DNA of 64,000 nt from Octopus sinensis (Eukaryota): contig NC_043005.1 of assembly GCF_006345805.1 (NCBI RefSeq), positions 930,001 through 994,000 on the forward strand, read 5' to 3'. The notes below the pieces were generated by a model that saw only the letters and a program-made list of their open reading frames with translations, made no database searches and was not told the DNA's origin. This document shows, one piece after another, positions 15,906 through 46,692 of this stretch. The first letter of the stretch is position 1; each line of letters opens with the position of its first letter. The position numbers and the translations under genes are program-made.

Positions 15906-15953
15906 GAGAACATTTTGGAAACCATTTTTGCTCTTGATGTTGACAATACACAT
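15906..15953 (+). CDS. DNMT3: DNMT3 exon ([16 protein letters not shown]), ADD acidic H3K4 pocket
   Basis: tttcag|GAG...CAT|gtaagt; 48 nt, phase 0-0; aligns to DNMT3A NCFLECAYQYDDDGYQ. Confidence 0.85.
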
Positions 15954-18900
15954 GTAAGTTAATATTTTTACAATTTTCTGTTAAAAGTGAAGATCTGTTG
16001 TATAGCATAGTTCTAAATTACTCAAGTTCATCTCATAATTTCTCTTGTGTGTTGAGACACAATATGTCCAATATGTCTTTTATGAAGAGAACTGTGGTAG
16101 GAAGGAAATTTGGTCAATCAAGTTTAGTGGCTCCCTTAGAGGCTCCTTTCAATATTTGTTGGTTTTTCATGGGGGATGAGAGAAGGGTGGAGCAGGTTGG
16201 TTTCTAAAGGGATCATATTAATATCTGATGCTTCTGTGTCAATAATAAAACTACAATAATAAGCCAGACCTTTTATTTTTATTAAGTTGTAGATTTAAAA
16301 TAATAATAACTTAAGAAATGACACTTCTGAAGCTGTCAAGATAAAGAAAAAAATAAAAGCATCACGGCCACAAGAATCGGCAAAATTTAAGAGGAGCAAA
16401 TATTAACAATTACAAGAAGTGTTTCTGCATGTTTCTATTGATTCTGGTGTCTCTCAGATCCATGGAAATAAAATGGTATCAGGAAGCAATGTATATTTGA
16501 TGATTTGACAAGTTGAAATGATAATTGGTTGAGTCTGAGCTGATTTTTTCTCATTACCTAAATTTTATTGGTACCTCCATGTTAGCCACTACCCCCCCTT
16601 CCTCAAACTCAGATATTCTATCACTGAAATGATGGGTTTGTAGCTTGGCATTATCACTTTATGCTAAAGATGAGAGACTCTTGGCTGAAGGCAAAATTTT
16701 GCTTAAATTTATATTTCCAACAACTCTCTGGTGATGTCTAACAATTCATCTGAAAAAAAAAAAAAAGGTTGAGCATTTGGACCAAAACAATAATTTAATA
16801 CAAATAACATTTATAAATTTGTCAAATTAAAGATCCATTATTTTTCTTAGTACAGAAAAAATTTACTCTTGGTTCTAAAGTCACCTCTACCTTATACCAA
16901 CAACACAAAAAGTATATTTTATTAAGTGAGGTATTTTTCAGCTGCTTTTATATTTCTTCAAAACAAAAATATTTTAATTTTTTTAGTAGTGTTACATAAC
17001 ATTGGATGCCAAAACCTTAAATTTTTGTTTTGCCTTATTCTTACAATCTTGTAACATGAAGTGAGTTTTAAGGGTAGCGAAAGGTGAAGTTCTTGGTTGT
17101 TGACTTGACCTCTGTTCGTTCAGCTTGAGATTACTCGATAAAAGCTTAGAAGCAGCTCACAAAGTCCAGCAGGTCAATCTACACAAACTTCAGCTTTTTA
17201 ATATTAATAGGTTTCCATTGTTGAATATGTTTAAAACCTAAAACTTGTGGTTTCCACTTTTGCAAAGTGGAGAACATATGAAAAACTTTTGTAGAACTAA
17301 CATGTTTATGCAGTTAATATTTTGGGGATTTTTCTCTTAGATTCTGTGGTGTAAAGAATGTGAAAATAGTATTATATGTATTGTTAATTTTTTTTTTTTC
17401 AATTTGCTAAATATTTCTGAATTGTGAAACAATCATATTTTGTATACTTTCAGGCTTTCTGTAGTATCTGTAGCCAAAGTGGTCAGCTGTGTATATGCAG
17501 TGTACCAGAGTGCAATAGGTAACATACTTTTAGAAGTGCAAGAATGTGATTTTGTAAATAAGCCAAAACTCTAATTCTGCCGATTAGAAAATTACTATTT
17601 TTAAATCTCACAACGAGAGATATTCAGCAGCAGTACTTTAGAGAAAAGATTTTTTCCAACATAACATGGCAGTCCTGGTTTAGGACAAATGTTGCTGTAA
17701 TTTAGCCCCAGGAGGCATTATCTCCAGCTGGCTATATGACATGATATGTGTCCTTATATTTCTGAACAAGAGAATCTAGCACCCCAGCGCTACCTCTAGC
17801 CGAATAATTATTTTGTGCTGATGAAGGGAAATAACCTGGAAATCGCGATACACAGATATTGTTTTGAGCTGAGTGGGGGTGCTAGATTCCCATGTATAAA
17901 AATATAAGGACGCAGATCATGTTGTATAGCCAGCTAGAGATGATGTATCCTGGGGCTAAATTACAGCAACATTCGTCCTAAACCAGGACTGCCATGTTAT
18001 TTTGGCAAAAATCTTTACGCTAATCCTGCCATTCTATGTTTGTCATAATGATGTGAAGAAATGATGCTATTTCATGCCTTTGTATACCAATTGTACTAAT
18101 CCTAGCATACTAGTTATAACACAATAGTTATAACATACTTATCGTTTACAAGTTATAATTTTCTAATCATACAAAATTTTACATCAGTGTTTAATTGTGC
18201 TCTATGGTTATTAATCACCCAACTTTGTGTTCTGTTGTAGAGTCTACTGCATTAATTGTGTCCAGAGTTGGGTTGGATGTGATGCATGGGATCTGGTAAG
18301 TTAATTCTTTCATAATCCATACAAATAAATGTGAATTTGGGTGTCCCTTCTTTTTTCTAGACAAGAAGCTTCCACTGAAACAGGAGTTACCCTTTCAGCA
18401 CACAAAGGAAAAATTGTACATTCTTATATCTATATTCTATGAAATGTAAATCCTGTGCATGTGTCCACATGGATTACTATGCTTGCAAATGATGTATATT
18501 TGAAATTAGGATCATCTTGGGAGTGTTTCTGTTCTATTTTGGTGCACTAACCTGCAGCAGAAATTGGGTCCTTTTTATCCCATCTTCAGTTCTTAGCACC
18601 AGCAAAATGTGAGTAAAAAGAAACCAAAGTCATCGGAGAATTATTTAGCCTATTCAGAAATTGGATGGCACACAAAATAATTAACATTTTGGGAACTCTC
18701 TTAACTTTTACAATAAAACACCTTTTGTGTTGGTTTGGATAAAATGCCTCTGACTAGCAATTTTGTTATTGATTAAATCCTTTCCCACCCAACAAAATCC
18801 TTTGAACATGAAGTGATGTGCATTTTCCTGATACTAAATCCTTTCTCCAAGCAGTAAATGTTCTTCTATACCACTTGTGAATGATAAAAATTCTTCATTG

Positions 18901-21900: not shown

Positions 21901-24900
21901 AATGTGCCTAAACCAAAGATGGCAGTTATTTTTCTTGTCTGTGAAGCACTCTGATGCAAGCCTTGATGAATCAACCAGACACAAGCAGAAACCTTCAGTA
22001 GTGGCTGTGGTTGAAGGCATGTGAATAAAATTGTTCTTACCTTGACTTGCAGTTGGGTACTGCTGGTAGATTGATCAATTCTTCACCCGTTTGCCTTGAC
22101 TTCTCTATATCCATGACTAGCATCTGTCACTGTGAGTGCCCCAAGGGAAAACAAAATGCAGAGGAAAACTTCCCTTCTCAATTGCCGATGTGACATCATC
22201 TCTTGTCGCTTCTGGTCCTTCCACCACAGTGACATTCTACAATGGCACTAAAGGTGGTGTGGACACCACTGCCAAAAAGATGGGCTGCTACATCTTGCTC
22301 CAGATGCACGAAACGATGGCTGATGTTGTTCTGTTCCCTCATGGATAAAGTTTGCTTGAATTCCTTTGTGATATACATTTGGAATAATGAGAAGGACAGT
22401 CTATGATCTCATAGAGAATTTTTGAGATCACTTGGAAAAGAACTTCTGAGGGAACAACTTGAAATATGCTTGCAAAATAAAACTGGAATACAGAAGGAAT
22501 TGCTAAAGACTATTGAGACCTGTGCTTCCAGATTGGCAATTGATGTTCCGTTAGTACCTGTACATCCTGTACAAAGTTCAAAGATCATGCTTCACAACCT
22601 CGTCCCCTGTCTTCCTGGGTCTACCTCTACCACAGGTTCCCTCCACAGTTAGAGATCAGCACTTCTTTACACAGCTGTCCTCATCCATACACATCACGTG
22701 ATCATACTGGTGCAGCCGTTTCTCTTGCACACCACATCTGATGCCTCTTATACCTAATTTTTTTCTTAGGATGCTTACACTCTGTCGAACATGCACATCT
22801 AGTGAAGCATCCTGGCTTCATTTCTCTCAAGTCTACACATGTCCTCAGCTGTCACAGCCCATGTTTCACTGCCATGCAGCATAGCTGTTTGCACACGAGC
22901 ATCAAACAATCTGCCTTTCATCCTGAGAAAGAGGGCCTTTGTTGGCAGCAGAGGTAGGAGCTCTCTGAACTTTGCCCAGCTTAATCTTACTCTCACAGCT
23001 ACACTCTTGGAGTATCCACCTCCACTACCACTTGGTCACCTAGATAACAAAAGCTATCTACTACCGCTAGATTACCCCCTGGTAGTTGATGGAGTCTCTT
23101 TTCTGCACATTTTCTTCCCATTCACTCCAACTATCCCTATTTTTCCCCATTTACCATTAAATCCACCCTCTCATCTCCCATACACTGTTGCAGCCCCTAC
23201 TTGCCTAGGCTCCTATTTCCTCTCTCCTACCTTCTACATTGGGAATCCAGCCAAACACCTCAGTTTATTTCTTTCCAGCTCCACTCCATGTTCTTTTCTA
23301 AAATGTGAGCAGTCATATTGCTTCTCTACAGGAAGATGGTCTTCTCCAGCCTCTTCTTTTATATTTTAACCTCCTTAGTTTCTACCTCAAGCCACTTCCT
23401 TGGGCTTTGTAGTTTCGCACACTACACAGTGACCTCACTAGAACTGGTGGCATGAAAAAAAGCACCCAGAACTTGTAAAGAGGCTGATAATATGAAGTGT
23501 ATCCATCTGTAAAAATCCAGATTTAAAAGGGGTAGAAATAATTCAGTAAAGTTTTACAATGAACTCTTGACTAAGGCTCCAGAAGTTTTGACTTGGTGTC
23601 TTCTTTTTTTGTAGGTTCTTCAGTTTTACAATGTTACTTTAAGCTGATGGCTTAACAGCCCTTCACAAGAGCCAGTATGGCTAGTATGTTAATAAAACTA
23701 GTTATTCTGTCCCTTGTCCTAATCTTTAAATATACATGACCTTCTTAAATATTTACCTTTATATAAAGGTGAGGAATTAACAATATCAAGCAAAATATTT
23801 TGTGATGCTTATTCTCACTCTGAATTTTGTGTTAAAATCTCATTAAGTTTTACTACCTTTCATCCTTCCAGGATAAATAACATAAAATGCCAGTTAAATT
23901 CTAAAGACGATATAATCAAATTTGTACCTTATGGTTTCTACTTGAATATGTAGCATAGCATTAACCTGAATTCAAACTATGAACTTTATTTCTAGATGAA
24001 AGGTATAATGTACATCTCATCCAATAATATTCATTAGGTATAAAACACCTGCTGAAAATGTAGTATTTGTTTTTTTACATGAACCTTTTTTATATTACCT
24101 TGGATTGGATAAAGCATGAGATTGGTGCTCTTCCTAACACTGACCCTTGTTTTCAAGTAAACTACTTTGTTCCAGTAGCTTTTGCACATTGAAACACCAA
24201 GTGGAATGTTTTCTTTATAGAGAGGAAACATAAACAACTGCTACTAGTGTCTTGGTGACTGACTCGTATGCGTTAGTAATATATTCAACAGCCTTCTGTA
24301 GAGGTTCTTTCTGCTGAAGTTAACTTGGTTAATCTAAGGCTGTACTAGAAGACAATGAAGGTGCCCTGCAGTTGGGTGAAACTTTTTAACCACACTGGCA
24401 TGGCCAAAGTCTTTCATGTTCTAAGATGAGGTTAGTAGTTCAAAATATAATCTAATGCCATTTAATCTGAATAAGTTGTTGTTGGCAGTGATAGGGAGGT
24501 TGGAAGCTAGTGATGGTGAACGATGGCAAAGGGAGGAATATAAATTTTGCAGTTGTGTTAATATAGCATTTTTTTTCAGAAATTAAACCACAAATTCACA
24601 TTTTATTTGTATCTTTATAAATGACTGAGAGATACTCTCCAAATTGCTTTAGTATCTCAGAAACACATAATGTCATATAATTTTTAATGTTACCTTTGTT
24701 TAGTAACGTACTCAAAGTAAAAGATAATGTCATTCAACTTGATATATTAACAAAATATATTGAAAATTGACAAGATTTTCATTTCGTATTAAAAACTATG
24801 AGAATGTTTTTTTCTCTTCTATTATTAGATTCTCTCACAGAACCCCTGGTCATGTTTTCTTTGCCGAACTCCAAACAAAAGACGTGCCTGTGGATATCTT

Positions 24901-27375
24901 CAAGCCAAACCGAACTGGTCTCTTAACATTATGCATATGTTCAATAGTCATCAAAAGCTGGCGGTTTGTTGTTCAGTTTTGCTGTCTTTCATTTGTTATA
25001 GTGAAATTAATCTTGTCTTACACTAATGTCTGATCTGTTGCTTATGCATTTCTGGTCCTTAGTGACCATCTTTGTCTATCATGTGTCTTCCTTCAGAGGT
25101 GACAAAATAGGGGCACCATTAGTTTATTTGGGGAAAATATACCAATAATTCATCACAAATATGTGCACTCTTAAATCAAGAGTATAGCAGTGCCTTTTCT
25201 CAGCCTATAGTTAACAATATACTTCATAAGCCAACCAAATTCTTTAACCTCCAGAAGTCGGCTGCAGAGACACATCTTAAAATTAATGACATTATAGAAG
25301 ATGATTTACTTAAAGCTATTAATGACCTAGATTCAAACCCAGCATCCAGACCAGGAGGTCTCCCAGCCATATTGTTAAAAATGTGCAAAACCAGCCTCAC
25401 AAAACCATTAAAGATACTATTCCAAAAGTCATTTGATACAGCATATTTCTAAAACTACTGAAAGACACAATAGTAACACCTGTACATAAAGGAGGTAACA
25501 GGGCTGAAGCCAAAAACTACAGACCGGCTTCTCTCGTCTCATACATCTAAAGTTATCAGATGCATTGTCCGGAAAAGTATAATTACATACCTTGAAGGAA
25601 ACATCCTCTTTGATGACACACAGCTTGGTTTTCAAACTTGACAAAGCTGTCTGTCACAACTATTACAGCACCATAACACTATTCTCAATAATATTTTGAG
25701 AGGAAAGAACACTGGCTGCGTATACCTAGATTTTGCTCTGGTCTTTGACAAAATTGATCATGGAATCATCTGTCATAAGTTAAAGGATTTTGGTATTGGA
25801 GGAAAACTTGGAGAATGGCTCTTTGACTTCCTACTTGGTAGGAGTCAATCTGTTGCTGTAAATAGTTTTCTCTCTGCTAAGTTACCTGTAATAAATGTCA
25901 TACCTCAGGAAACGGTTCTAGGACCATTATCATTTGTCATCACCATAGGATCACTAGTGCATTCAATCCAACCTAATGAGTTGTGCTGATGACACAAAAA
26001 TATTGATGGCTATCCAAACTCCAGATGCTGTCACACTCCAAAATGAGCTAAACATCATTTATCAATTGGCAAATGAAATCCATCAAAATTTCAAGTTCTT
26101 CATTATTGGGGGAGGGGGGACGCACACTGATCACACAATATTCGACACCAGGTAACACAATGATTCAATGCACCAGTGACATACAAGACTCAGGAGTAAT
26201 CATATCAAGTGATACATCTGTGAACTGACCTCAAAATGCAGACATAGGGATGGATCCTATGAACCTTTGTGACAAGAAAACTGGTAGTTATGCTAATTAT
26301 ATGGAAAACCTTAGTTCTGAGCAGATTAAATTACTGCTCACAGCTTAGGTCTCCAAACTTATCTGGTCTCATAGAAGAAATTGAAGTGTTACAAAGAATG
26401 TTCACCAGTAAAATATCTTTGGTTAAAAGCCTTAATTACTGGAAATGCCTAAAAGAGATCTTTAATGCATGAACCGGTAGATACTGTCAGCTTCCAAATA
26501 TATCATCTTTGAAATCATGAACAAAAACTATTGTACCATTCTTATATGTAGAGGTCCTCAACTGTTCAGCTGCTTACCTAAAGAAATCAGAAATATAAAA
26601 AGAATCTCTACTGAAACTGAAAACAAAAAACTAGAAACTTCCTAACAACAATTGTGGGCCAGCCAAGCATTCAAGGATACACTCAGGGAAGATCAACTAC
26701 TACAAGCTCAATCATTGACCAACTTCCTGCCATAAAGTGAAAAGAAAAACGATAGAAAATAAGTTAAGGCAGTGCTCCTGCATGGCTGTAGTCCTCTGAC
26801 TGAAACCATTAAAAGAATAGGGTCACATTACAAGTTTTATAGAAAATTATTATTATAACCAATTCTTTTGTTTATTTAAAAGTTTTCTTGGATCTGATTA
26901 AAGTTTTCTTTTTTTTTTTTTTCTGACATGAATTTACCTCTCCTCATCACATAAGATTTCTATCTGATGTCTTCATGCACAACATTTCTGATTGTTTTTT
27001 TCACTGACACACGATATTTTTTTGCAATTGACCTTCATTGATTTTCCCGGATTGTCTTCAATGTTTTGCTTAACTTCCTGAATAAATTCAGGTGTCCTGA
27101 TAGAATCAGAGCGTTTGGAATGTGTTTTACGTTTCTCTAACTCACACTGACTCTTTCAGCCAAAAGATCTTGCAACTTTCAGAAAACAAGAAATTTTCTA
27201 AATCACCCTGCTTAGCCTTTAAATGAAAAGGCTTAGCATTGCTTTTCATTTCAATAGGAAGCAAAGGGCCTGACATTGTTATTTTCTGAAATAGAAGTTC
27301 AATAAAAAAAGTTGTCAAATAAAATAACGACTAAAAATACATGTGTCCTCAAATACCGTCTGCACCCTGTGTGTG

Positions 27376-27457
<82 letters not shown>

Positions 27458-27675: not shown

Positions 27676-27707
<32 letters not shown>

Positions 27708-27713
27708 TGTATA

Positions 27714-27767
<54 letters not shown>

Positions 27768-31739: not shown

Positions 31740-31787
<48 letters not shown>

Positions 31788-34700
31788 GTGTGTGTGCTGT
31801 TTGCTTTTTAGCTAGTTCACCTTCTGCAATCATACTTAAGCCAGGTTTTTCTTTTATTTGATATTTACTTATGAGTATTTTTTTTTAGACGGATTCCCTT
31901 TTCATTTGATGGGAGTACATTACTTCATTTTCCAATATTTTAAGGACACATTTATTACCCTACACTGTTAGTATAAAGGGAAGAATAGTTGATTCTCTGG
32001 TCTGAAAGCTTGCAACAGAGTGAAGTTTGTTGAAAATAGTCAAGTGGCCAACAATGAACTCAGACAAGCAATAATGAAGTTATGTCTGTATGTAATGTGC
32101 TTAGGGTTTTTATTTTTTAGAAATCAGAAAAATTCATGGCGTTTTTTCCATTTCTAATGTTTTTTTTTTTTCTGCCTTTCAGGAACCCAATTTGTCTTAC
32201 CTTACCAAGTGTCCTGAAAGGCCCCCAATTCGTGTATTGTCATTGTTTGATGGTATTGGAACAGGTAATATACATCCTAAATTTTCACCAGTTACTCTTA
32301 TCATACTGGCAAGGCATGGCTGCATGGTTGAGAAATTTACTTCTCAGTATTTAACAGTGTAACATGAAAACAAATATACTGCTGCACAGGATGTTCAGGC
32401 TAAATTTGATGATTTTCTATCTCCATTATTTTTTCAAAAACAGCTTGATGTATTAGTGAAGAGTGTCAACAGTGTTAAGAGTGCATAAAGATTAAAGTTA
32501 GCTGACATAGAGGACTGGAAGCCATCTGCATATTGGAAAAGAGTTAGCTGTATCGTGATTCATGCTGGGAATCAAAATGCCATGTGAACACTGTAAAGGT
32601 TGCACGGCATGACATTGGACATCATGAAAGCAAGTTTCCTCAAACTGTGTCGGTCCTTGAGAATGTCTCCAGTGATATCATGCCACCCAACACTTTTGAA
32701 CAGGACCTTACACACAATTCGGCTGGCTATGTGATGTGGCTGGAGAGATTTGCTGCTGGAAGGACATATGTATAGCAGCAACATTCAACTTCTTGACATA
32801 CCTCCATACAGAGTCGGAGAATTTACCAGCTCCAATTTTTGGCTTTATAATTCTCCCATTTGTAATCCCATGGATTACTACATGTGGGGTGCAGTTGAGA
32901 AAAAACACCAACCACTCTGCCTGTAACACCAAGACTGACTTGGTGGTCAAGATGGAGGAGGTGTTCAAAGATCTCCCCTGGGACATAGTGAGGAATGCAT
33001 ACATCGTGTACCAAAGCTGTCTTGAGGCCGTGGTAGAAGCTGAGGGCAGTTACTTTGAATAATCTTATCTCCCAGCCATAATCTAGTTGATATTTTAAGC
33101 ACATTTGTTTTCCTTTCCTTTTATACAAACTGTCACATTTAGCCCAAACATCCTGTATGTTTGGAAATGCTAAAGGTTGATTGGCTCCTGTGGCATGTAA
33201 AAAACACCATCTGAGTGTGATCGATGTCAGGCCCGCCTGACTGACCCCCTTGCTGGTGGCACATAAAAAGTCCTACTGCATTCTCGGAGTGGTTGGCATT
33301 AGGAAGGGCATCCAGCTGTAGAAACCTTGCCAGATCAGATTGGAGCCTGGTGCAACCACTGGCTCTCCAGATGTCAGTCAATCCGTCCAACCCATGCCAG
33401 CATGGAAAACGGGCATTAAACACTGATGATGATAAAAAACAGTTACATTCAGTAGAGATATGGTATTTCAAACATTTTCCTTTTCAGAAGAACTTGATTT
33501 TTTTTGTCCAGGGAATCAGAAAACTAATTTTGAAGTGGGAAAAACTGTTGTTGCTGATGATGGCAACTATATTTTGAACGGATGTTTTATGCTGATCTGA
33601 ACTCGTTACTTTCTGACATCCCTAATATACAGGTGTGTGTCCCTAATATACAGGTGTGTGTATGTACCTCCTTATCTCGACATTGCATGATGTAATTCGG
33701 GCCGTGACTGCTGAGGACATGCGTAAGCTCGCAAGGAATGAAGCCAGTATGCTCCGATGAATATGTAATGTTAGTGTGCATACTCAACAGAGTGTTAGTA
33801 CCTTGAGAGAAAAGTTGGACCTAAGAAGCATTAGATGTGGTGTGCAAGAGAGACGACTGTGCTGGTATGGCCATGTGGCGAGAATGGATGAGGATAGCTG
33901 TGTGAAAAAGTGTCACACCCTAGCAGTTGAGGGAACCTGTGGAAGAAGTAGACCCAGGAAGACCTGGGATGAAGTGGTGAAGCATGACCTTCGAACATTG
34001 GGCCTCACCGAGTCAATGGCTAGTGATCAGGACCTTTGGAAATATGCTGTGCTGGAGAAGACTCGGCAGGCTCAAATGAGACCATAACCTTGTGGTCTAT
34101 GCCAGGGGTGTAACCAGCCCACTTATGCATACTTTTCCTTCATTGGACACTAAACTCTGCTTGCGAAGACCTGTTGAGGCAGGTGAAATCGAAATAAAAT
34201 TCGATGACTGGCATCCGTGCTAGTGGAGCGGTAAGAGCCCCATCCGAGTGTGATCGTTGCCAGAGCAACAAACTGGCTTCTGTGCCAATGGCACATAAAA
34301 AGCACCATTCAGGCGTGATCATTACCTGTGTTGCCTACTAGCACTTGTGCTGGTGGCACATGAAAAAACATTCGAACGAGGTCGTTGCCAGAGCCGCTGG
34401 ACTGGCTCCTCTGCAGGTGGCACATAAAAAGAACCATTTGAGTGTGGCCACTGCCAGTACCGCCTGACTGGCCCTCGTGCTGGTGGCACGTAAAAGCACC
34501 CACTACACTCTCAGAGTGGTTGGCGTTAGGAAGGGCATCCAGCTGTAGAAACACTACCCGATCAAGATTGAAGCCTGGTGCAGCCATCTGGTTCGCCAGC
34601 CCTCAGTCAAAATCGTCCAACCAATGCTAGCATGGAAAGAGGATGTTAAACGATGATGATGATGATGATGATGTAATATTCTGCTAAAACATGTCAGAAA

Positions 34701-37700
34701 TGTTGTTTGTAATTAGAAGAAAATGTTTTCTAATTTCTATTGTTGAATGTGAAACAATTTTCATTATCTTATTTTCCAGGTAAGGTTGCCCTTGATCAAC
34801 TTGGACTTACCATCAAGGAGTATTTCTCTAGTGAAGTTGATGCTGATGCTCTGATTGTAAAACGGTTTACTTATGGCCAGAGCATCAAAGAAATTGGTGA
34901 CATTACTGAACTTACAGAAGTAAAGGTAACTTGCAGTTCACGCTTGTTGTTAGATAAGTGAATTTTTTTTTAAAGTATTTAGAAAAATACCATATCAAAT
35001 ATGGTAGAAGCTGGTGATTCAGTTCCAGATGTTTTGTTTAGTCAAATTAATGCTTGCTCAAGGTGGTGATCGGGCAGAGACGTTCACCAGGCAAAATGCT
35101 TAGCAACATTTCATCTATCTTTGCATTCTAAGTTCAAATTCTGCTGAGGTTAACCTCATCTTTCATCCTTTTGGGGGGTCAATGTAATTGACTTACCTCC
35201 TTCCCCAAAATTACTGGCCTTGTGCCATAAAATGAAATTTATACTTGTCCAATCAACAATAAAGTATTAAGAAAACTGGTTAGGAAATATTTACAAATAT
35301 TTGGTCTAGATGGCTGGTGATTGATTGATTGATTGATTGATTCTAGTTTCAGATTTGGCTTTCACAAAAAGTTGAGATGAGAAAGATATTTGATAAGATA
35401 TAAATTGTTAGATTTAAAATTAGAATTTATTATTTGTATTTTTTTTTTTTTTAAACTTTGAAAGTAAGTTTCTTCTGTTGTCAGGTAAGCGAGTATTGTC
35501 TGCCTCAGTTCACTTAGCTAAACACTGTGGTAAACTTGCATTCTATCTCATCCACTCACTACTACAGAAACCAAGAATTAAATACCTGCAAAGAAAACTC
35601 AAGATCTGTTGAAGAATTAATTTCAGAGAAATGCTGTGTCATATTCTTATGTGATGGAGATGTTTGTGAGTAGGACGACATGTCCAAGAATGTTTGTAGT
35701 GTCTTGTGTGGCAGAATTGAAAGACTGACATGTTAGCATTTGAATATCAAAAAAATTTCAGAACATTTGTTTAAGCCTTAATTCTATTTCTTTTTTCTTC
35801 TTTATGTCAGCTGTCAGAACTGTGTCCCTTGGATTTGGTCATAGGTGGATCTCCTTGTAATGATTTGTCTTTGGTTAATCCTGCTCGCAAAGGATTCTCT
35901 GAAGGTATAGTTTACATACTCTGTATATATTGCTATTGTTAAGTACCCAACCAGTATGTACGTGATTGCACACACGCACACACATATAATCATCATCATT
36001 TAATGTTTGCTTTCCATAGTGGCATGGGTTAAACGGTTTGACTGGAACTGGTATGGCAGAGGGCTGCACCAGGTTCCAGTCTGATTTGGCATGGTTTCTA
36101 TGGCTGGATGCCCTTCCTAATGCCAACCACTCCTAGAGTGTAACAGGTGCTTTCTATGTGCCACCAGCATGGGTGCCATTTACTTGACATTGACAATGAA
36201 GACTACAATTTCACTTAGTTTGACCAAGTTTTCCCAAGCACAACATCCCCAAAGGTCTTGGTTACTTGTCATCACCTCTGTTGTGCCTAACATTCAAACA
36301 TCATGCTTCACCACCTCATCTCATGTCTTCCTGGGTCTACCTTTTCCGCTGGTTCCCTCCACAGTTAGAGCTCAGCACTTCTTTAAACAGCTACCTTCTT
36401 CATCCATGTGCATCACACAACCATGCCAGTGCATTCATCTCTCTTGCACACCACATCTAATGCCTCTTATGTCCCATTTATGCTGTCATATGTGCTCACT
36501 GATATTGCACATCCAGCGAAACATACAGGCTTCATTTCTTTCAAGCTTTTGAATGTCCTCTGCAGCCACAGCCCATGTTTCACTACTGTGGGGCACAGCT
36601 GTTTACACACAGGCATTATACAATCTGCCTTTCATTCTGAAGGAGAGGCTGTTTGTTACCAACAGAAGTAGATGCTCTCTGGGCTTTGCTCAGCTCATTC
36701 TTATTTTAGCATCTACACTCTTGGAGCATCCATCTCCACTACTGACTTGGTTACCTTGATAATGGAAGCTATCAACTACTTCTAGGTATCCTTAAGGCAT
36801 TTGATGGAGTCTTATTTTCTGTACATTTCTGATGCTGCTACACCAGTCATTGGGTATGACTACCACGCATCACAGGACCATACCAGCACAATCGTCCCTC
36901 TTGCACACCATATCTGATGCCTGTTATGTCCAGCTTTTCTCTCACGATGCTTACACTGTCATACATGCACACTCACATTGCACATCCAGCAAAGCACACT
37001 AATTTCATTGCTTTCAAGTCTACGCATGTCCTGTGCAGCCACAGTCCCTGCTTCACTGCTGTTAACATACAAGCATCATACAGTTTGCCTTTCACACTGA
37101 GGGAGAGACCCTTTGTTGCCAACAGAAGTAGGAGCTCTCTGAACGTTGCCTAGCCTATTCTTATTCTAGCAGCTACACTCTCAGAACATCCACCACTACT
37201 ACTGACCTGGCCACCGAGATAACAGAAGCTATCAACTACTTTTAGGTAACCCACCCCCCTGGCATTTGATGGAGATATTGCTGCACCTCTTATGTATCCA
37301 TAGCTTACTCTGCATATATCTTATGGAATTTCTACCTATGCCTTTTCTACAGATTGAGCAGGGCCATCTACCTGAGGGGATTTGTGGTTTGTCTGCTTTC
37401 CTACTTATTAAGACTTTGGTTTTTACTAGGTTATCTCTAAGGCCTATAATTACTAGACTCCTGAAACTTCTCTAGTTCTGGTAGTGATTCAGCAATAAGA
37501 ACGAGATCATCAGCATAGAGGAGTTCCCAGGGGCAGCCCGTTTTAAATTCCTCTGTTACTGCTGGAGGACCATGATGAACACGAGGGGATGAGGACTGAT
37601 CTTTGGTGAACCCCTATTTGTACCCTGAATTCTTTGCTATACTCATTGCCAACCTTCACCTTACAGACAACATCCCTGTACATGGCTTGTACAGCTCTCG

Positions 37701-40700
37701 CCAACAGCATGCTAGTTTCTGCATTGACCACCAGATAAGTGATTGGGGGAGCCTGTCAAAGGCTTTCTCCAAGTCAACAAAAGCCTAGCACAGAGGCTTA
37801 TCTTTGGCTAGGTATTTCTCCTGCAGCTGCCTTACCAGAAATATAGCATCAGCGGTGCTTCTCTCTGGCATAAAAGCAAACTGCATCTCATCTAGACTAA
37901 CTCTCTCCCTAATTAGTTGGGCTGTGACTCTCTCCATAACTTTCATCACCCGATCCAACAATCTGATACCCGTGTAATTATTTCTATCCAAGGCATCACC
38001 TTTCCATTTGTAGCAGTTCACTATGGTGCTGCTATACCAGTCATTCGGTATAGCTCCTTCATGTACAACTTGATTAACTATACCGGTGACTAGAGCATAA
38101 CCCATACCACCAGATCTTTTAACCATTTCAGTGGTTATTCCAGATGGGCCAGGGGCTTTTCCCATCTTCATATCCTTCATGGCTTTGTCTACCATGCTAC
38201 TGTCTATTTGAATTACTGGTCCCTCTGTTGGATCCTTACTAGGCAGACTCTCCTCCCTCTCCCATGAGTTCTCCACATTTAATTGCGTTTGTTAGTGGCA
38301 CTTTCAAATCTCCTTCTTTGCAGGGTCACTAACTGCCAGTGACCCATCATCCATGTGGAGACATTTCTCTCCTATCACATCACGATTTTCTCTGACATAC
38401 TGTCCTACCACATCACAGTTTAAAATAATTTACAAACCATTCACTCCAGTTCAGGGAACCACACTCTTCTGAAGTCACCCATTCATACTTTAAACAATGT
38501 TTTTGTGTGATATTTGTACTTGTCATTTCTTCCCCCCCACTTCTATTCTATCATAAAGCAAAATGCAACAAGCATAACTATTTGCTGCAGAGTTGGATAG
38601 TTTGTGTCTGATAATGAAAGTGATGTTTCTATTAAAAACTTGTGAAGGATGTAAAAAGTAGTTTTATTAAAATCACAGTCTTTTTGCTGAGTCAAAAACA
38701 CGTGATCGTTTCCTCTTATTTCTAGCCTCAATTATTCCAGACAATACAAATAGATAAGTGCTCCCCGTCCTATTTATCGTCTTACTATTATGACATGTAA
38801 TATATCCCAATATGTCTCAGGTGAGAACAGTATCAGCACATATCATGTTCCTTCCTATATTATTTCAACCAATCACCTCCTTTTTATGTCTTTATCCGCT
38901 GTTCTCTCTCTCCACTCTGCCACATGTTAAATACTTTTCTTATCTGCTATCATTCTCAATATCCTCTCATAAGCCCCATATTTATCCTTTCGGACATCCA
39001 GCAATAGAAACTATAGCTAAGATGACATTGCAGCTTGCCAGTTCTGTTTCAAACTGGCCTGGAAATGGGGACTATTTCCAGTATTATGAAGGCTTTTGAA
39101 ATTAGTGAATAAATTCTGTTTTACATGCATTTTAGTTGGATAATGTATACAATTCCTCAGTATTAAAATTTCCTCATCATATTTGGTGATATTTAAATAA
39201 GTTGTCCTCCAAAATAACCACATTCATGTCAGTATATAAAAAGTTGTTTTATGGAACCAATTTAAATCTCTTTGAAATATGTAGGGATGTATTTTAAGCT
39301 CCAACATATATTAATAAAGTTAAAATGTATTTTTCAGCATCTCTCTAATTTTATAAACAAACAGATTCAGTCAAAATATTCTCTTTCCAGAGGGTACCGG
39401 TATTTTATTCTTTGAGTTTTGTCGGATTCTGTCAATTGTTCAAAGGTTGTGCAAAGATCGACATGTCTTTTGGCTTTATGAAAATGTTGCTGCAATGAAA
39501 ACCAGTTACAAAAATATAATCTCCAGATTCCTAGGTGTAAGTACTAATTTCTAAATTAAGATGTTGATTAAATATCTGTTTTCATATGTTTAGCACTGTG
39601 GTAGTTAGATTAGATAACTTATAGAATCCAACCAGTTATAAATTTTAAGGTTTAAGTAAAATATAGCATGTACTTCTGTTTTACAGAATGGTATGAATTA
39701 AATTTTGTTGACTTCGAATTGTTTTGCAAATGATAAATGTCTTTGAATGGTTTCAGAAAAAATACTTATTGAACATGAAAATAACGATTTCTTTATTGTT
39801 CCTTCAAGGGCATTGAGTGACAGAATAATGTTACAAACTATGCTTATTTGATAAAAATGAAGGTATTCATATGTGCTAGTTCCAAGTGGGGTTTTAAGAG
39901 AATAGATAACATCTTTCTATCTAGATGTCTTTTCAGACATAATTACTTTCGAAAGAATTATGCATGAAAGCCTAAACAGGATAAACTTACAATTAGAATG
40001 TTAGACAGGGCAGTGAACTGACAGAATATCTTGTGGGTATTTTCCTCAAAATTGCTGGCCTTGTCAGACATGCATTTGCTGTTCAAGAAGAAAGACTATT
40101 TTAAAATGTTATTCTCTGAATTTTTATAAGATATTCAGTTGTGTTGGTGCATTCACAAGATTTAAATATACAGTCAAAGGTTTTCAAGATATTTGAGTCC
40201 ACTTAATTTCATGATTTACTTGTAGTGTAAACCTGCTCTCTGGGATGCAAAGTTTTTCTCAGCACAACACAGGCCCAGGTATTTCTGGGGTAACTTACCA
40301 ACAATATACAGGTAAGGTTGACATTCAATTTTGAAATAACTGCATAATCTTTTAAGCTATAATTTATATTTTAACAAATGAAATTAAACTAGATTGAGTA
40401 AATAGGAGGTATTACTAGTCAGAAATAATTTGATGACTATATTTGATACAATGTCTTAGCTATGACAATTCTATCATTTATAGTGAATGTCATTTTTTCA
40501 TTATTCCCAGCAGAAGAGTAAAATAATTTGGCAATTTAGTCACCAATGATTGTTTTCTGACATTTTATATAGATATTCCTTTGCAATAAAAAATATTCTG
40601 ATGTATAAATGAGGAGTAATTTCATCATATTGACTTGCTTAGGATAGTTTATATAGAGACGAAAACTGCAGTAATGCTAAAGTAATACTGGCCAGCTCAA

Positions 40701-42446
40701 TTCAAACTAAACCAAAAGTATATATAAAATTCACAATGTCTTATCTGTATGTTTAGTGTCAGTTTATCATTTAAAGACTTCTTCAATAATTATTTATTTA
40801 ATGTAAACATTTTCTTCCAGTTCACAGCCAACAACTGAAGATGATTCTCTTTACTTAGATAAAATTCTTTCACCAAACTGCAACAGAAAGGCTAGAGTAA
40901 GTTGGTTCGATTTTCTATACCTAGACAATAGCTGTCTTGAGAAGTATGATTCACAACCTATCATATCTGTATGTTTGAAACAACAGTATTGTCTCAAAAA
41001 TGCCAGTTAATAAATATCGATTCATTAACTAAATACCAGAAAGGAAATATATACTGTTGATATGTTTGTGGTGCATGGCTACAATCCATTAACTTATAAC
41101 AGTAAAGGAAGACTAATACATCATTTAGGCATTGTAAAATATCAATGTATTTTGTCATCAGGTGAAACAGCTACGGACAGTGACAACAAGAAGTAACTCA
41201 CTCAGACAGGGAAAAAATGAAAATATTTTGCCAGTTGAAATGGATGGAGAAGAAGACGCTATTTGGATTACAGAATTGGAAAAGTAAGTCTTTTCTGCTT
41301 ATTACGGTGAAATAAATTTCTACAAATATTTTGGTTCTTAGTTGCTGAACCTGCAGGAAAGAACTACACTCTTTAAACCTATGGGGAAAAATATGGCATA
41401 GGGGACACAAGGGTGAAAATAGAGTAATTGACTTCTCACCTTTTCAGATAAAGGTATAATTATTGTGTTTGATAAAAAGGTAGTTGTCTAGCCCCATGAC
41501 CAAAGCTATTTCAGCGGTGATCATCTGATCCACTTGGATTACATATCCCCTCCCCCACGACGACGACCAACTAAAGCCAACAGTTTAGCAGTTTTGCAAT
41601 TTGGCAACTAACCTTTTGGCCCCTATTAATCCTGACTGCTTGTTATACTTTAATAACTGGTAGCAATATTGAAATGACATTTTTGTGATAATCTCTGGTC
41701 ATTCATCATCATCGTTTAATGTCCGTTTTCCATGCTGGCACGGGTTGGGCAGTTCAACTGGGGTCTGGAGAGCCAGAAGGCTGCGCCAGGCCCAGTCTGA
41801 TCTGGCAGTGTTTCTACGGCTGGATGCTCTTCCTAAACGCCAACCACTCCGTGAGTGTAGTGGGTGCTTTTTACGTGCCACTTGCACAGGTGCCAGACGA
41901 GGCTGGCAAACGGCCACGAACGGATGGTGCATTTTACGTGCCACCGGCACGGAGGCCGCACGCTAAGCCCAAATCTACTTTTGCTGTAAAGAGAACAAGG
42001 AACGCTTATTCAAAATGTTGCTCTTTGATGAACTGAGGAAGTCGTCTGCTTTCATTTCTGATGCTGTTGTTTCTAACGAAAGTTTATAAAATGATTTCCA
42101 AAAGCATAACAATATTTTCTTTGGAATATTTTTCAAGTCAATAATTGATATTTCAAACTGCTATGGTAAATTCTAACTTGTGGCACAGCTTATGTCTGCA
42201 AATGTTTTCTTTTTTTTAGAGGAAAGCCTGTATTCTACACTTTCCTACCAACAGATAAATATTCCACATTTCCTCTCTTTAAAGTTTGTATCTTATTTCA
42301 GAATCTTTGGTTTTCCTACACATTATACTGATGTACGAAATCTTAATCACAGCCGTCGACAGCGGCTCCTTGGAAGAGCTTGGAGTGTTCCAGTAATTAA
42401 GTTCCTGTTATCCCCATTGACCAAATTATTCCACACTGCTACTTAA
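15906..42446 (+). CDS. DNMT3: DNA (cytosine-5)-methyltransferase 3 family gene, 3' part: 12 coding exons, 1200 nt, 399 aa + stop (ADD domain + catalytic domain); 5' exons not found in window
   Basis: Manually spliced AG/GT-bounded exons with consistent phases. They give PHD-type Cys spacing (CSIC..C....C....C..C..WSCFLC), motif I LFDGIGTG, motif [11 protein letters not shown], motif VI ENV, motif [22 protein letters not shown] and C-terminal FGFP.HYTDV...[14 protein letters not shown], colinear with DNMT3A as I know it. Confidence 0.97.
17454..17518 (+). CDS. DNMT3: DNMT3 exon ([22 protein letters not shown]), ADD PHD finger
   Basis: tttcag|GCT...AG|gtaaca; 65 nt, phase 0-2. Confidence 0.93.
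17638..18023. mobile_element. Fold-back element (~150-bp imperfect inverted arms) with a hammerhead-like motif in the spacer
   Basis: aacatggcagtcctggtttaggac...gccccagga at 17663-17712 mirrors 17948-17998; arms about 17638-17786 and 17875-18023. Confidence 0.85.
17812..17856 (+). ncRNA. Minimal type I hammerhead ribozyme-like motif (imperfect helix II)
   Basis: tgtg-CTGATGA-agg gaaataa cct-g-GAAA-tcgcga-TA-caca; helix I tgtg/caca; palindromic helix III ATCGCGAT; one extra G before GAAA. Confidence 0.6.
18241..18295 (+). CDS. DNMT3: DNMT3 exon ([18 protein letters not shown])
   Basis: ttgtag|A...CTG|gtaagt; 55 nt, phase 2-0. Confidence 0.93.
18940..19915 (+). mobile_element. Highly decayed RTE LINE fragment
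   Basis: [12 protein letters not shown]...[12 protein letters not shown]; later LHGSETWA remnant. Confidence 0.75.
19922..20305 (-). mobile_element. RTE 3' UTR-derived short repeat ending in (GAT)n
   Basis: catcatcatcgtttaacgtc...ggatgcccttcctaacgccaaccac. Further copies at about 33160-33435 (+), 41700-41960 (-), 50330-50720 (+) and 52004-52135 (-). Confidence 0.85.
20814..22560 (+). pseudogene. piggyBac transposase pseudogene (PGBD-like DDD domain), stops and frameshifts, 3' end cut by an RTE
   Basis: Acidic N-terminus [15 protein letters not shown]; [14 protein letters not shown]; [10 protein letters not shown]; QYMP..PAKYGIK; [11 protein letters not shown]; [10 protein letters not shown]. 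Confidence 0.92.
22575..23460 (-). mobile_element. RTE LINE fragment
   Basis: [16 protein letters not shown]...[15 protein letters not shown]. Confidence 0.88.
24829..24963 (+). CDS. DNMT3: DNMT3 exon ([12 protein letters not shown]...HQKLA), end of ADD domain
   Basis: tattag|ATT...GCG|gtttgt; 135 nt; PWxCxxC motif. The donor is the least certain boundary. Confidence 0.88.
25200..26819 (+). mobile_element. CR1/L2(Jockey)-group LINE remnant, RT to 3' tail
   Basis: [16 protein letters not shown]; [19 protein letters not shown]; PQETVLGPL; ADDTKI; LNYCSQL; RGPQLF; tail gcagtgctcc.gcatggc...tgactgaaac..taaaagaata. Confidence 0.9.
27370..27766. repeat. Compound (TA)n/(CA)n/(TATG)n microsatellite
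   Basis: Directly visible. Confidence 0.97.
27767..28840 (+). mobile_element. Penelope-like element C-terminal ORF (~355 aa uninterrupted): Zn-finger linker + GIY-YIG endonuclease, no RT
   Basis: WLIIPY...RHF...[18 protein letters not shown]; CNCR...C...CL..AVYQ...VYIGAT...KQR..H...STGLS.YIW.LK...W.I...APVY...C.LC.NE. Confidence 0.9.
30704..31109 (-). mobile_element. Full-length tRNA-derived SINE with internal (TA/TG)n and (GAATAAAA)n tail
   Basis: Pol III A-box-like TGGCTGTGTGG (31088-31098) and B-box-like GGTTCAGTCC (31046-31055); tail gcatggccgcagtcaaatgactgaaacaagtaaaagaataaaagaata. Confidence 0.92.
31241..31367 (+). ncRNA. Decayed type I hammerhead motif, probably the pseudo-LTR of the Penelope-like element
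   Basis: atct-CCGAAGA-GGCC...GGCC-AAAA-cagctg-TA-agat. Two core changes (CTGA>CCGA, GAAA>AAAA). Internal 10-bp stem tgtctcattt/aaatgagaca. Confidence 0.6.
31745..31796. repeat. (TA)n(TG)n microsatellite
   Basis: Directly visible. Confidence 0.95.
32183..32264 (+). CDS. DNMT3: DNMT3 exon ([28 protein letters not shown]), motif I
   Basis: tttcag|GAA...ACAG|gtaata; 82 nt, phase 0-1. Confidence 0.97.
32387..33155 (+). mobile_element. Internally deleted Tc1/mariner-superfamily transposon (769 bp)
   Basis: TIRs caggatgttcaggctaaattt / acatttagcccaaacatcctg followed by TA; transposase C-terminus [18 protein letters not shown]...[13 protein letters not shown]. Confidence 0.88.
33660..34672 (+). 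mobile_element. 5'-truncated RTE LINE with complete 3' UTR and (GAT)n tail
   Basis: [24 protein letters not shown]...[10 protein letters not shown]; tail ttaaacgatgatgatgatg; 21-bp duplication at the 5' junction (33619-33660). Confidence 0.92.
34780..34925 (+). CDS. DNMT3: DNMT3 exon ([22 protein letters not shown]...[11 protein letters not shown]), motifs II-III
   Basis: ttccag|GT...AAG|gtaact; 146 nt, phase 1-0. Confidence 0.96.
35811..35904 (+). CDS. DNMT3: DNMT3 exon ([31 protein letters not shown]), catalytic Cys at 35856-35858
   Basis: tgtcag|CTG...GAAG|gtatag; 94 nt, phase 0-1. Confidence 0.97.
35990..38530 (-). mobile_element. Cluster of at least two RTE LINE fragments (overlapping element coordinates)
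   Basis: ORF 37785-38276 ([21 protein letters not shown]); C-terminal region represented twice (about 36330-36830 and 36860-37300). Confidence 0.88.
39391..39536 (+). CDS. DNMT3: DNMT3 exon ([14 protein letters not shown]...WLYENVAAM...ISRFLG), motif VI
   Basis: ttccag|AG...GGT|gtaagt; 146 nt, phase 1-0. Confidence 0.97.
40226..40311 (+). CDS. DNMT3: DNMT3 exon ([29 protein letters not shown]), motif VIII
   Basis: ttgtag|TGT...AG|gtaagg; 86 nt, phase 0-2. Confidence 0.97.
40821..40896 (+). CDS. DNMT3: DNMT3 exon ([25 protein letters not shown])
   Basis: ttccag|T...AGA|gtaagt; 76 nt, phase 2-0. Confidence 0.92.
41162..41283 (+). CDS. DNMT3: DNMT3 exon ([18 protein letters not shown]...WITELE-K), target recognition domain
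   Basis: catcag|GTG...AA|gtaagt; 122 nt, phase 0-2. Confidence 0.97.
42302..42446 (+). CDS. DNMT3: DNMT3 last coding exon ([47 protein letters not shown])
   Basis: tttcag|A ATC...TAA; motifs IX-X; ends at the stop of the ORF-track entry 42180-42446. Confidence 0.97.

Positions 42447-46149: not shown

Positions 46150-46692
<543 letters not shown>

What the first reader, a model, noticed from the sequence alone, without database searches (positions are those of the whole stretch)
15906..42446. Complete, apparently catalytic DNMT3 hidden in small exons among TEs
Seen: 12 exons splice to an open 399-aa ADD + methyltransferase sequence with intact FDG, PC, ENV and RxR motifs. Most exons are too short for the ORF track. 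Known: DNMT3 is patchily retained in invertebrates. The TRD reads TTRSNS (DNMT3A-like R836 rather than DNMT3B-like K). Inference: a functional de novo methyltransferase in a probable cephalopod, which fragmented annotation could easily miss.
Basis: partly seen in the sequence, partly recalled or inferred. Interest (0 to 1): 0.78.

Follow-up and report, generated by a model that had tools for sequence, protein, structure and literature searches.

The report
Octopod DNMT3 gene, last twelve exons
The window holds the last 12 exons (half of the histone-reading ADD domain plus an intact methyltransferase domain) of an octopod's DNMT3 de novo DNA methyltransferase gene; the gene is real and conserved, but it is not complete in the window and has already been annotated, measured and assayed in octopuses, so it is ordinary.

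Summary
Twelve + strand exons (15906-42446), all with AG/GT splice sites, join into 1200 nt, which is 399 aa plus TAA. The product aligns end to end with human DNMT3A and DNMT3B (E about 1e-105). Every catalytic and SAM-binding residue checked is intact, and the TRD reads TTRSNS.

- **Not complete.** Exon 1 starts at a splice acceptor in the middle of the ADD domain and has no start codon. The closest relative is Argonauta hians 'DNMT3B' (GAB1603055.1, 1166 aa, 88% identical). It matches the model only over its residues 766-1163. Its N-terminal region, PWWP domain and GATA-like zinc finger have no counterpart in the 15.9 kb upstream.
- **Probably functional.** Exon lengths and phases are identical to the Argonauta gene. 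dN is 0.06 against near-saturated dS (omega about 0.03). Downstream synteny is kept.
- **Not novel.** Argonauta DNMT3 is annotated in full. Octopus bimaculoides DNMT3 (LOC106869540, A0A0L8HNR6) is annotated, its expression is tabulated, and it has been assayed in human reporter cells.
- **R836 is not diagnostic of DNMT3A.** That column reads R/N/K = 64/54/53 among 221 homologues.

Verdict: a real, ordinary, already known gene.

The parts
15906..15953 (+). Exon 1 of the model (codons 1-16, [16 protein letters not shown]). It is the tail of the ADD GATA-like finger region and carries the acidic D-V-D loop that aligns with human D529/D531. It starts at a splice acceptor and has no ATG.
   Evidence: It aligns to Argonauta residues 766-781 and to the homologous Argonauta exon of identical length, 48 nt.
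17454..17518 (+). Exon 2 (65 nt, codons 17-38, [21 protein letters not shown]). It is the first part of the ADD PHD-type zinc finger.
   Evidence: Pfam PF21255 covers residues 19-68. The Argonauta exon is also 65 nt. This exon is absent from the transcript contig L001.
18241..18295 (+). Exon 3 (55 nt, codons 38-56, [19 protein letters not shown]), part of the PHD-type finger.
24829..24963 (+). Exon 4 (135 nt, codons 57-101). It holds the end of the PHD-type finger (PWSCFLC) and the ADD-to-MTase linker. Its donor, GTTTGT, is the weakest in the gene.
   Evidence: The Argonauta exon is also 135 nt, with donor GTTGGT.
32183..32264 (+). Exon 5 (82 nt, codons 102-129), with MTase motif I ([13 protein letters not shown]; FDG at 32246-32254).
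34780..34925 (+). Exon 6 (146 nt, codons 129-177), with motifs II and III (E147 at 34833-34835, D169 at 34899-34901).
35811..35904 (+). Exon 7 (94 nt, codons 178-209), with motif [11 protein letters not shown]. The catalytic Cys193 codon is at 35856-35858.
39391..39536 (+). Exon 8 (146 nt, codons 209-257), with motif VI ENV (39480-39488) and the FF-interface residues F216 and F255.
40226..40311 (+). Exon 9 (86 nt, codons 258-286), with motif [14 protein letters not shown] (RxR at 40271-40279).
40821..40896 (+). Exon 10 (76 nt, codons 286-311), the variable start of the target-recognition domain.
   Evidence: It is 93% identical to Argonauta residues 1051-1080.
41162..41283 (+). Exon 11 (122 nt, codons 312-352), the TRD loop [14 protein letters not shown] (TTRSNS at 41183-41200).
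42302..42446 (+). Exon 12 (145 nt, codons 352-399 plus TAA). It holds motifs IX and X and the dimer interface, with RNLNHSRR at 42336-42359 (Arg/His/Arg at human positions 878/882/884).
43373..43778 (+). Two non-coding blocks conserved with the Argonauta locus, about 0.9-1.3 kb past the stop codon. They are a probable 3' UTR or regulatory sequence of the gene; that role is inferred.
   Evidence: window 43373-43530 matches L002 27300-27461 at 83% identity, and 43598-43778 matches L002 27591-27784 at 70%.

Best explanation
This is the 3' part of the DNMT3 orthologue of an octopod cephalopod. It is an unduplicated invertebrate DNMT3, neither 3A nor 3B. The twelve exons encode the PHD-type half of the ADD domain (residues 17-68), a linker, and a complete C5-cytosine methyltransferase domain (residues about 117-395). 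The rest of the protein is encoded upstream of the window. In Argonauta that is about 765 residues: a Thr-rich N-terminus, the PWWP domain and the GATA-like finger of ADD. The intron before exon 1 is longer than 15.9 kb here. The mechanism below is inferred from the family. PWWP would dock on H3K36-methylated nucleosomes. ADD would bind unmethylated H3K4 and release autoinhibition of the catalytic domain. The catalytic domain would dimerise through its RD interface and oligomerise through its FF interface. It would flip out the target cytosine. Cys193 would attack C6, Glu239 (ENV) and Arg273/Arg275 would activate the ring, and the methyl group would come from SAM held by motifs I-III and X. 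The output would be de novo CpG methylation, feeding the sparse (<10% of CpGs) methylation reported in O. bimaculoides. Shown here: exon structure, open frame, residue conservation, fold, orthology and purifying selection. Inferred: transcription in this species, enzyme activity and chromatin targeting.
For: Gene model: 12 exons with AG/GT sites, 399 aa. Family: PDB phmmer gives DNMT3B 2e-106 and DNMT3A 3e-105, against DNMT3L 4e-21, plant DRM2 about 1e-19 and M.HhaI 3e-6. Pfam finds PF00145 and PF21255. The AlphaFold2 model has mean pLDDT 80.7, and its MTase domain matches DNMT3A/3B catalytic-domain crystal structures at target-normalised TM 0.89-0.94 and rmsd 2.2-3.0 A. Residues: F123, D124, G125, E147, D169, P192, C193, N194, E239, N240, V241, R273, R275, R316, T319, T320, R321, N323, H359, D362, R371, R373, G376, R377 and W379 are all canonical or conservative, and 8 of 8 PHD-finger Cys ligands are present. 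Orthology: 88% identity to Argonauta hians DNMT3B over residues 766-1163. All 12 exons have the same length and phase, except the last (145 versus 151 nt). Only exons are conserved within the gene span. The downstream conserved blocks and the tail-to-tail FERM-PDZ-phosphatase neighbour are shared. Selection: against Argonauta, pN is 0.059 and pS 0.721, giving omega about 0.025, with differences by codon position of 41/16/185. Against the more distant transcript L001, pN is 0.198 and pS 0.79. Transcription in relatives: L001 is a spliced mRNA contig colinear with exons 1 and 3-12. O. bimaculoides DNMT3 models show low but non-zero expression in tissues. Activity in a relative: O. bimaculoides DNMT3 was more active than DNMT3A R882H in a human reporter-silencing assay.
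Against: There is no transcript evidence from the species of the window itself. The 5' two thirds of the gene are not in the window, so lesions there, or a physical break between the two parts, cannot be excluded. The intron before exon 1 is 277 nt in Argonauta but more than 15.9 kb here. The donor of exon 4 (GTTTGT) is weak. Synonymous sites are close to saturation, so omega is an average over a long history and would not reveal a recent loss of function. The species is not identified beyond 'octopod'.
Confidence: 0.9

Rival explanations
1. It is a decaying or orphaned 3' gene fragment. Transposon insertions or a rearrangement have cut these exons off from the promoter and 5' exons, and the frame is still open only because the break is recent.
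For: No upstream exon and no homology to the Argonauta 5' region appear in 15.9 kb, where Argonauta has a 277-nt intron. The upstream sequence is made of LINE endonuclease and reverse-transcriptase fragments. There is no transcript from this species.
Against: All 12 exons are open, with 23 of 23 canonical splice signals. Omega is about 0.03. Every other intron in the gene is also expanded (26.5 kb against 8.3 kb for the same exons), so a long intron is the local norm. There are no N gaps in the window. The 3' flank and the neighbouring gene are syntenic.
Confidence: 0.05
2. It is a second, lineage-specific DNMT3 paralogue rather than the single orthologue that is already annotated in octopuses.
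For: The species is unknown. I could not fetch the O. bimaculoides protein for a direct comparison.
Against: Exon structure and downstream synteny are identical to the one Argonauta gene. The window protein has the R878/H882/R884 combination that the preprint reports for O. bimaculoides DNMT3. In a set of 221 homologues that combination occurs only in the window protein and in Argonauta. Only one close relative (>56% identity) turned up in 1.84 billion representatives, though the library is clustered at 50% identity, so close paralogues would collapse into one representative.
Confidence: 0.04
3. It is a catalytically dead regulatory DNMT3, in the manner of DNMT3L or DNMT3B3.
For: His stands at the position of human R882, where R882H weakens DNMT3A.
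Against: All motifs that DNMT3L lacks are present: PC, ENV, RxR, the TRD and motif X. The match to DNMT3L is 85 orders of magnitude weaker than the match to DNMT3A/B. The preprint reports that adding the flanking arginines (S878R, A884R) to human DNMT3A R882H partly restores its activity, and the window protein carries Arg at both positions. It also reports that the octopus enzyme with this configuration is active in cells.
Confidence: 0.01

Closest known systems
Argonauta hians 'DNA (cytosine-5)-methyltransferase 3B', GAB1603055.1 (1166 aa; GCA_054771915.1, contig BAAFZT010000028.1)
   Same: It is 88% identical over all 398 alignable residues, with no gaps. The 12 terminal exons have the same lengths and phases. 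The R/H/R configuration at human positions 878/882/884 is shared, as are the downstream neighbour and the conserved 3' blocks.
   Different: The Argonauta gene is compact: 8.3 kb for these exons against 26.5 kb here, and 277 nt against more than 15.9 kb for the preceding intron. Its C-terminus is two residues longer. Its 765 N-terminal residues have no counterpart in the window.
Octopus bimaculoides DNMT3 (UniProt A0A0L8HNR6 / A0A0L8HNI8; LOC106869540; JGI models Ocbimv22010486m and 10487m)
   Same: It is described as having PWWP, ADD and MTase domains, with His at the R882 position and Arg at 878 and 884. This is exactly what the window encodes. It is expressed at low levels in tissues and is active in a human reporter assay.
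   Different: The sequence could not be retrieved here, so identity to the window is untested.
Human DNMT3A and DNMT3B (for example PDB 4u7t, 5yx2, 6kda, 8eih)
   Same: Sequence identity is about 44% over the whole ADD-PHD plus MTase region, without large indels. All catalytic, SAM-binding and DNA-contact residues are shared, as are the acidic ADD loop residues D529 and D531. The fold matches at TM 0.89-0.94.
   Different: The window protein predates the vertebrate 3A/3B duplication and scores equally against both. It has His instead of R882, with compensating Arg at 878 and 884. It has one extra residue (SEEGTG against YEGTG) before motif V.
Transcript contig L001 (Logan assembly of SRR8281685; species unnamed)
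   Same: It is a spliced mRNA colinear with exons 1 and 3-12 and is 70% identical at the protein level. It shows the upstream GATA-like finger (PF17980) that the window lacks.
   Different: It lacks the 65-nt exon 2, which shifts the frame. It has Cys at both the R836 and R882 positions.

Membership tests
DNMT3 (animal de novo DNA cytosine-5 methyltransferases) | A C5-cytosine methyltransferase domain with motifs I, II, III, IV (PC), VI (ENV), VIII (RxR), IX and X in the canonical order | tested here: met
   Pfam PF00145 scores 64.7 bits against a cut-off of 22. All motif residues are present. The fold matches DNMT3A/3B catalytic domains at TM 0.89-0.94.
DNMT3 (animal de novo DNA cytosine-5 methyltransferases) | Closer to DNMT3 than to DNMT1, DNMT2, plant DRM or bacterial enzymes, with a short DNMT3-type TRD | tested here: met
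   phmmer against PDB gives DNMT3A/B at about 1e-105, DNMT3L at 4e-21, DRM2 at about 1e-19 and M.HhaI at 3e-6. The TRD loop [14 protein letters not shown] aligns without gaps.
DNMT3 (animal de novo DNA cytosine-5 methyltransferases) | ADD domain, PHD-type zinc finger | tested here: met
   PF21255 scores 37.7 bits against a cut-off of 27, over residues 19-68. 8 of 8 Cys ligands are conserved.
DNMT3 (animal de novo DNA cytosine-5 methyltransferases) | ADD domain, GATA1-like zinc finger (PF17980) | tested here: inconclusive
   It is not encoded in the window. The model starts just after its four Cys ligands, and no exon was found in 1-15905. It is present in the orthologues (Argonauta; L001), so it is expected upstream of the window.
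DNMT3 (animal de novo DNA cytosine-5 methyltransferases) | PWWP domain N-terminal to ADD | tested here: inconclusive
   It was not found in the window. It is present in the Argonauta orthologue (PF00855). It cannot be judged without more upstream sequence.
DNMT3 (animal de novo DNA cytosine-5 methyltransferases) | Orthology to an annotated DNMT3 by gene structure and synteny | tested here: met
   Exon lengths and phases are identical to the Argonauta gene. The 3' blocks and the neighbouring gene are shared.
DNMT3 (animal de novo DNA cytosine-5 methyltransferases) | De novo CpG methyltransferase activity | not testable with these tools
   The only evidence is by proxy: O. bimaculoides DNMT3 was active in a human reporter-silencing assay.
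DNMT3 (animal de novo DNA cytosine-5 methyltransferases) | Transcribed and spliced as modelled in this species | not testable with these tools
   There are no reads or transcripts from the source species. A relative's mRNA (L001) supports the junctions by homology, apart from the two that flank the skipped exon 2.
   The scores are 359.5 bits for DNMT3B and 355.7 bits for DNMT3A. The R836 column reads R 64 / N 54 / K 53 among 221 homologues, and the relative L001 has Cys there.
DNMT3L-like inactive cofactors | Loss of catalytic motifs (PC, ENV, TRD, motif X) | tested here: not met
   All of these motifs are retained.

The most novel reading that the evidence does not exclude
In this octopod the intron that splits the ADD domain has grown from 277 nt to more than 15.9 kb of transposon sequence. 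These twelve exons might therefore also be transcribed on their own, from an intronic or transposon-derived promoter. Alternatively, as in the L001 transcript, exon-2 skipping might yield a PWWP-less and ADD-crippled methyltransferase. Such an isoform would escape H3K4 and H3K36 guidance and autoinhibition.
Probability: 0.05. Interest if true: 0.4.

Novelty: already known. Interest (0 to 1): 0.1.

Why it matters
It matters little beyond bookkeeping. Cephalopods are already known to carry DNMT1, UHRF1 and DNMT3, with sparse methylation of under 10% of CpGs in O. bimaculoides. The octopus enzyme has already been used experimentally because of its natural His at the R882 position. For this genome the practical value is an exact exon map of the 3' part of the gene. 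The exons are short (48-146 nt) and spread over 26.5 kb of transposon-rich introns. The map can be used to check or repair a fragmented gene model.

Tried and rejected
- **Word-index searches are not evidence of missing annotation.** The catalytic-domain search gave nothing above 75% identity, which at first suggested that no cephalopod DNMT3 was annotated. Every protein it listed is 522 aa or shorter, and it missed the 1166-aa Argonauta protein later found by the exhaustive search. The ADD/upstream search returned nothing at all, because the ADD domain shares few exact 5-mers even with close relatives.
- **Hunt for upstream exons in 1-15905.** I tried regular expressions for CxxC...CxxC and HP..G..CxxC; tblastn with Solemya, tick and spider DNMT3, with the L001 upstream peptide and with Argonauta residues 480-766 at permissive settings; and blastn and tblastx against the Argonauta 5' region. 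Nothing was found. The weak hit at 122-193 contains a stop, lies in CT-rich sequence and lacks a donor, so it is chance.
- **Identifying the species.** A transposon reverse-transcriptase query gave at best 71% identity to an Octopus vulgaris protein. An exact look-up of a transposon ORF was not on record. The run id SRR8281685 appears in no paper. No tRNA-like sequence was found.
- **The Männer 2021 mollusc DNMT survey** is not held in the library.
- **dN/dS against L001** could not be estimated, because pS of 0.79 is saturated. Argonauta was used instead.
- **Pseudogene, DNMT3L-like and DNMT3A-subtype readings** were considered and rejected; see the rival explanations and the membership test.
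Full report
**What is in the sequence.** I read the flanks in three frames. Retrieved mollusc and tick homologues then gave four more 5' pieces and one short internal exon.

Joined at their AG/GT boundaries, the twelve exons give exactly 1200 nt, which is 399 codons plus TAA. They span 15906-15953 to 42302-42446 and are listed in the parts section. Exons are 48-146 nt and introns are 265-7219 nt. It cannot be chance, because the product aligns over residues 3-395 with solved human DNMT3B (E = 2e-106) and DNMT3A (E = 3e-105) without large gaps.

**What the product is.**
- **Domains.** Pfam finds the C5-methylase domain (PF00145) and the PHD-type finger of the DNMT3 ADD domain (PF21255), both above the curated cut-offs.
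- **Catalytic residues.** I aligned the product with human DNMT3A and seven invertebrate homologues and numbered it from the catalytic Cys710. The following are all present:
  - FDG (motif I);
  - E147 and D169 (motifs II and III);
  - P192-C193-N194 (motif IV);
  - E239-N240-V241 (motif VI);
  - R273 and R275 (motif VIII);
  - R316, T319, T320, R321 and N323 (TRD);
  - H359, D362 and R371 (dimer interface);
  - R373, G376, R377 and W379 (motif X);
  - F216 and F255 (the two Phe of the FF interface).
- **Zinc ligands.** All eight Cys ligands of the PHD-type finger are present. So is the acidic D-x-D loop that in human DNMT3A contacts histone H3 and the catalytic domain; that role is family knowledge and was not tested here.
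- **Fold.** An AlphaFold2 model built on a 30-sequence alignment has mean pLDDT 80.7, with most of the catalytic domain above 90. Foldseek places that domain on DNMT3A and DNMT3B crystal structures at target-normalised TM 0.89-0.94 and rmsd 2.2-3.0 A.

**Why it is not complete.** Exon 1 begins directly after a polypyrimidine tract and AG. The frame upstream of it runs into stops without an ATG. Its first residues (ENILETIF...) align to the stretch just after the four zinc ligands of the ADD GATA-like finger, and that finger is missing from the model.

An exhaustive HMMER search of 1.84 billion representatives found one close relative, P0241. It is 1166 aa and 88% identical, and it matches the model only over its residues 766-1163. 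An exact look-up names it GAB1603055.1, 'DNA (cytosine-5)-methyltransferase 3B [Argonauta hians]'. Its first 765 residues comprise a Thr-rich N-terminus, PWWP and the GATA-like finger. They have no counterpart anywhere in the window, whether by tblastn at permissive settings, by pattern search, or by blastn and tblastx against the Argonauta 5' region. Whether the 5' part is intact cannot be judged from this window.

**Orthology and selection.** The Argonauta locus was fetched as L002. Its last twelve exons have exactly the same lengths and phases as those in the window (48, 65, 55, 135, 82, 146, 94, 146, 86, 76, 122). Only the final exon differs, at 151 against 145 nt.

Within the gene span only the exons, and a roughly 40-bp core of a repeat, are conserved. 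Downstream, two non-coding blocks (43373-43530 and 43598-43778) are shared. So is the terminal coding exon of a FERM-PDZ-tyrosine-phosphatase gene on the minus strand (45780-45913).

Over 397 codons, Nei-Gojobori counts give pN = 0.059, pS = 0.721, dN = 0.061 and dS about 2.4. That is omega of about 0.025, with differences of 41/16/185 at codon positions 1/2/3. A more distant spliced transcript, L001 from a Logan assembly of SRR8281685, is colinear with exons 1 and 3-12. It gives pN = 0.198 against a saturated pS of 0.79. The gene has been under strong constraint, although saturation means a very recent loss could not be seen.

**Organism.** The best named relatives are Argonauta (88%), then bivalves and a limpet (54-56%). 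A transposon reverse transcriptase in the window is most like an Octopus vulgaris protein, at 71%. The source is an octopod, and the species is not determined.

**Surroundings.** The introns and the upstream 15.9 kb are transposon-rich.
- There are reverse-transcriptase fragments at 14812-15558 (-) and 25696-25989 (+).
- There is a LINE endonuclease fragment at 6238-6774 (-).
- There is a piggyBac-type transposase fragment at 21366-21551 (+).
- A roughly 250-bp SINE-like repeat has at least twelve copies in the window, five of them in DNMT3 introns.
- The same twelve exons occupy 8.3 kb in Argonauta and 26.5 kb here. The intron before exon 1 is 277 nt there and more than 15.9 kb here.

'Hidden in small exons among TEs' is a fair description.

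**Comparison with what is known, and novelty.**
- The supplement of Macchi et al. 2022 (PMC9476566) lists O. bimaculoides '5mC writer' models Ocbimv22010486m (DNMT3B) and Ocbimv22010487m (DNMT3B.1). They correspond to NCBI LOC106869540 (XP_014770810-14) and UniProt A0A0L8HNI8 and A0A0L8HNR6, and tissue expression values are given.
- A 2025 paper reports DNMT3 with PWWP, ADD and methylase domains in Nautilus pompilius (PMC12532940).
- A 2025 preprint (10.1101/2025.09.24.678339) chose O. bimaculoides DNMT3 (A0A0L8HNR6) because it has PWWP, ADD and MTase domains and a natural His at the position of human R882, with Arg at positions 878 and 884. The authors expressed it in human reporter cells and found it more active than DNMT3A R882H.
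- The window encodes exactly this R/H/R configuration (R364, H368, R370). Among 221 aligned homologues, His at this position occurs six times, and the triple occurs only in the window protein and in Argonauta.

Octopod DNMT3 is thus annotated, its expression is measured, and it has been functionally probed.

**The TRD remark.** Residue 321 is Arg, as in DNMT3A R836, but this column is not diagnostic. It reads R 64, N 54 and K 53 among 221 homologues, and the relative L001 has Cys. The protein scores equally against DNMT3B and DNMT3A. This fits an invertebrate DNMT3 that predates the vertebrate duplication, which is family knowledge.

**Mechanism.** I take the protein to work as DNMT3 enzymes do.
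- ADD reads unmethylated H3K4 and relieves autoinhibition.
- PWWP, which is encoded upstream of the window, targets the enzyme to H3K36-methylated chromatin.
- The catalytic domain dimerises and methylates CpG, using Cys193 as nucleophile and SAM as donor.

The conserved residues, the fold, the orthology and the constraint are shown here. Transcription in this species, activity and targeting are inferred, with proxy support from the O. bimaculoides assay.

**Rival readings.**
- An orphaned 3' fragment is kept at 0.05, because the 5' exons are out of view.
- A second paralogue is at 0.04.
- A dead DNMT3L-like cofactor is at 0.01.

**Verdict.** The finding is ordinary and of low interest.

Noticed in passing
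L001 451 (junction between the homologues of window exons 1 and 3); window exon 2, 17454-17518: The only transcript contig of a relative (Logan SRR8281685) joins exon 1 directly to exon 3 and omits the 65-nt exon 2. This shifts the frame and stops after three codons. The gene caller therefore split the contig into a 153-aa N-terminal ORF and a 291-aa MTase-only ORF that starts at an internal ATG. It could be a non-productive or regulatory isoform, or an assembly artefact.
   Followed up: partly
window 42336-42359 (residues 364-371, RNLNHSRR): His stands at the position of human DNMT3A R882, the leukaemia hotspot, flanked by Arg at 878 and 884. In a set of 221 homologues this triple is shared only with Argonauta. 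The preprint 10.1101/2025.09.24.678339 describes the same configuration for O. bimaculoides DNMT3.
   Followed up: yes
window 45780-45913 (- strand); L002 32612-32749: This block is 84% identical to the 3' terminal coding exon of the Argonauta FERM-PDZ-tyrosine-phosphatase gene. The two genes lie tail to tail with DNMT3, and the stop codon falls near 45868-45870. The neighbour gene is therefore syntenic. Its other exons in 46-64 kb were not mapped.
   Followed up: partly
window 43373-43530 and 43598-43778: Two non-coding blocks, 83% and 70% identical to Argonauta, lie about 1 kb past the DNMT3 stop codon. They are a probable 3' UTR or regulatory sequence.
   Followed up: no
window 13783-13875, 19921-20103, 33139-33433, 34417-34663, 35989-36173, 41703-41947, 49632-49928, 50420-50717, 52000-52126, 53961-54141, 55183-55370: A SINE-like repeat of about 250 bp occurs in both orientations at 72-85% identity. 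Its translation gives the recurring '...[13 protein letters not shown]...' ORF fragments. A roughly 40-bp core also occurs many times in the Argonauta DNMT3 introns. ARAGORN finds no tRNA-like part.
   Followed up: partly
window 15906-42446 against L002 18005-26265: The same twelve exons span 26.5 kb here and 8.3 kb in Argonauta. The preceding intron is more than 15.9 kb here against 277 nt there. The expansion is due to transposon and microsatellite sequence.
   Followed up: yes
window 27300-27900, 46060-46720, 47615-48750: Long TA/CA-type microsatellite arrays produce the spurious 'YIYIYI' and 'CVCVYI' ORFs of up to 377 aa on both strands.
   Followed up: no
window 27341-28840 (+): This is the longest ORF in the window, at 499 aa. 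It begins inside a microsatellite and has no Pfam match. By eye its C-terminal part (…[18 protein letters not shown]…) resembles a GIY-YIG nuclease motif, as in Penelope-like elements. This was not verified.
   Followed up: partly
window 4019-6774 (-), 14812-15558 (-), 37785-38276 (-), 21366-21551 (+): There are LINE remnants: an APE-type endonuclease (PF03372) and reverse transcriptase (PF00078). Two related reverse-transcriptase copies lie at 14.8 and 37.8 kb. A piggyBac-type DDE transposase fragment (PF13843) sits in intron 3.
   Followed up: partly
tool behaviour: The word-index protein search listed no protein longer than 522 aa. It missed the 88%-identical 1166-aa Argonauta protein that the exhaustive search found. 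A negative result from it should not be read as 'not annotated'.
   Followed up: yes
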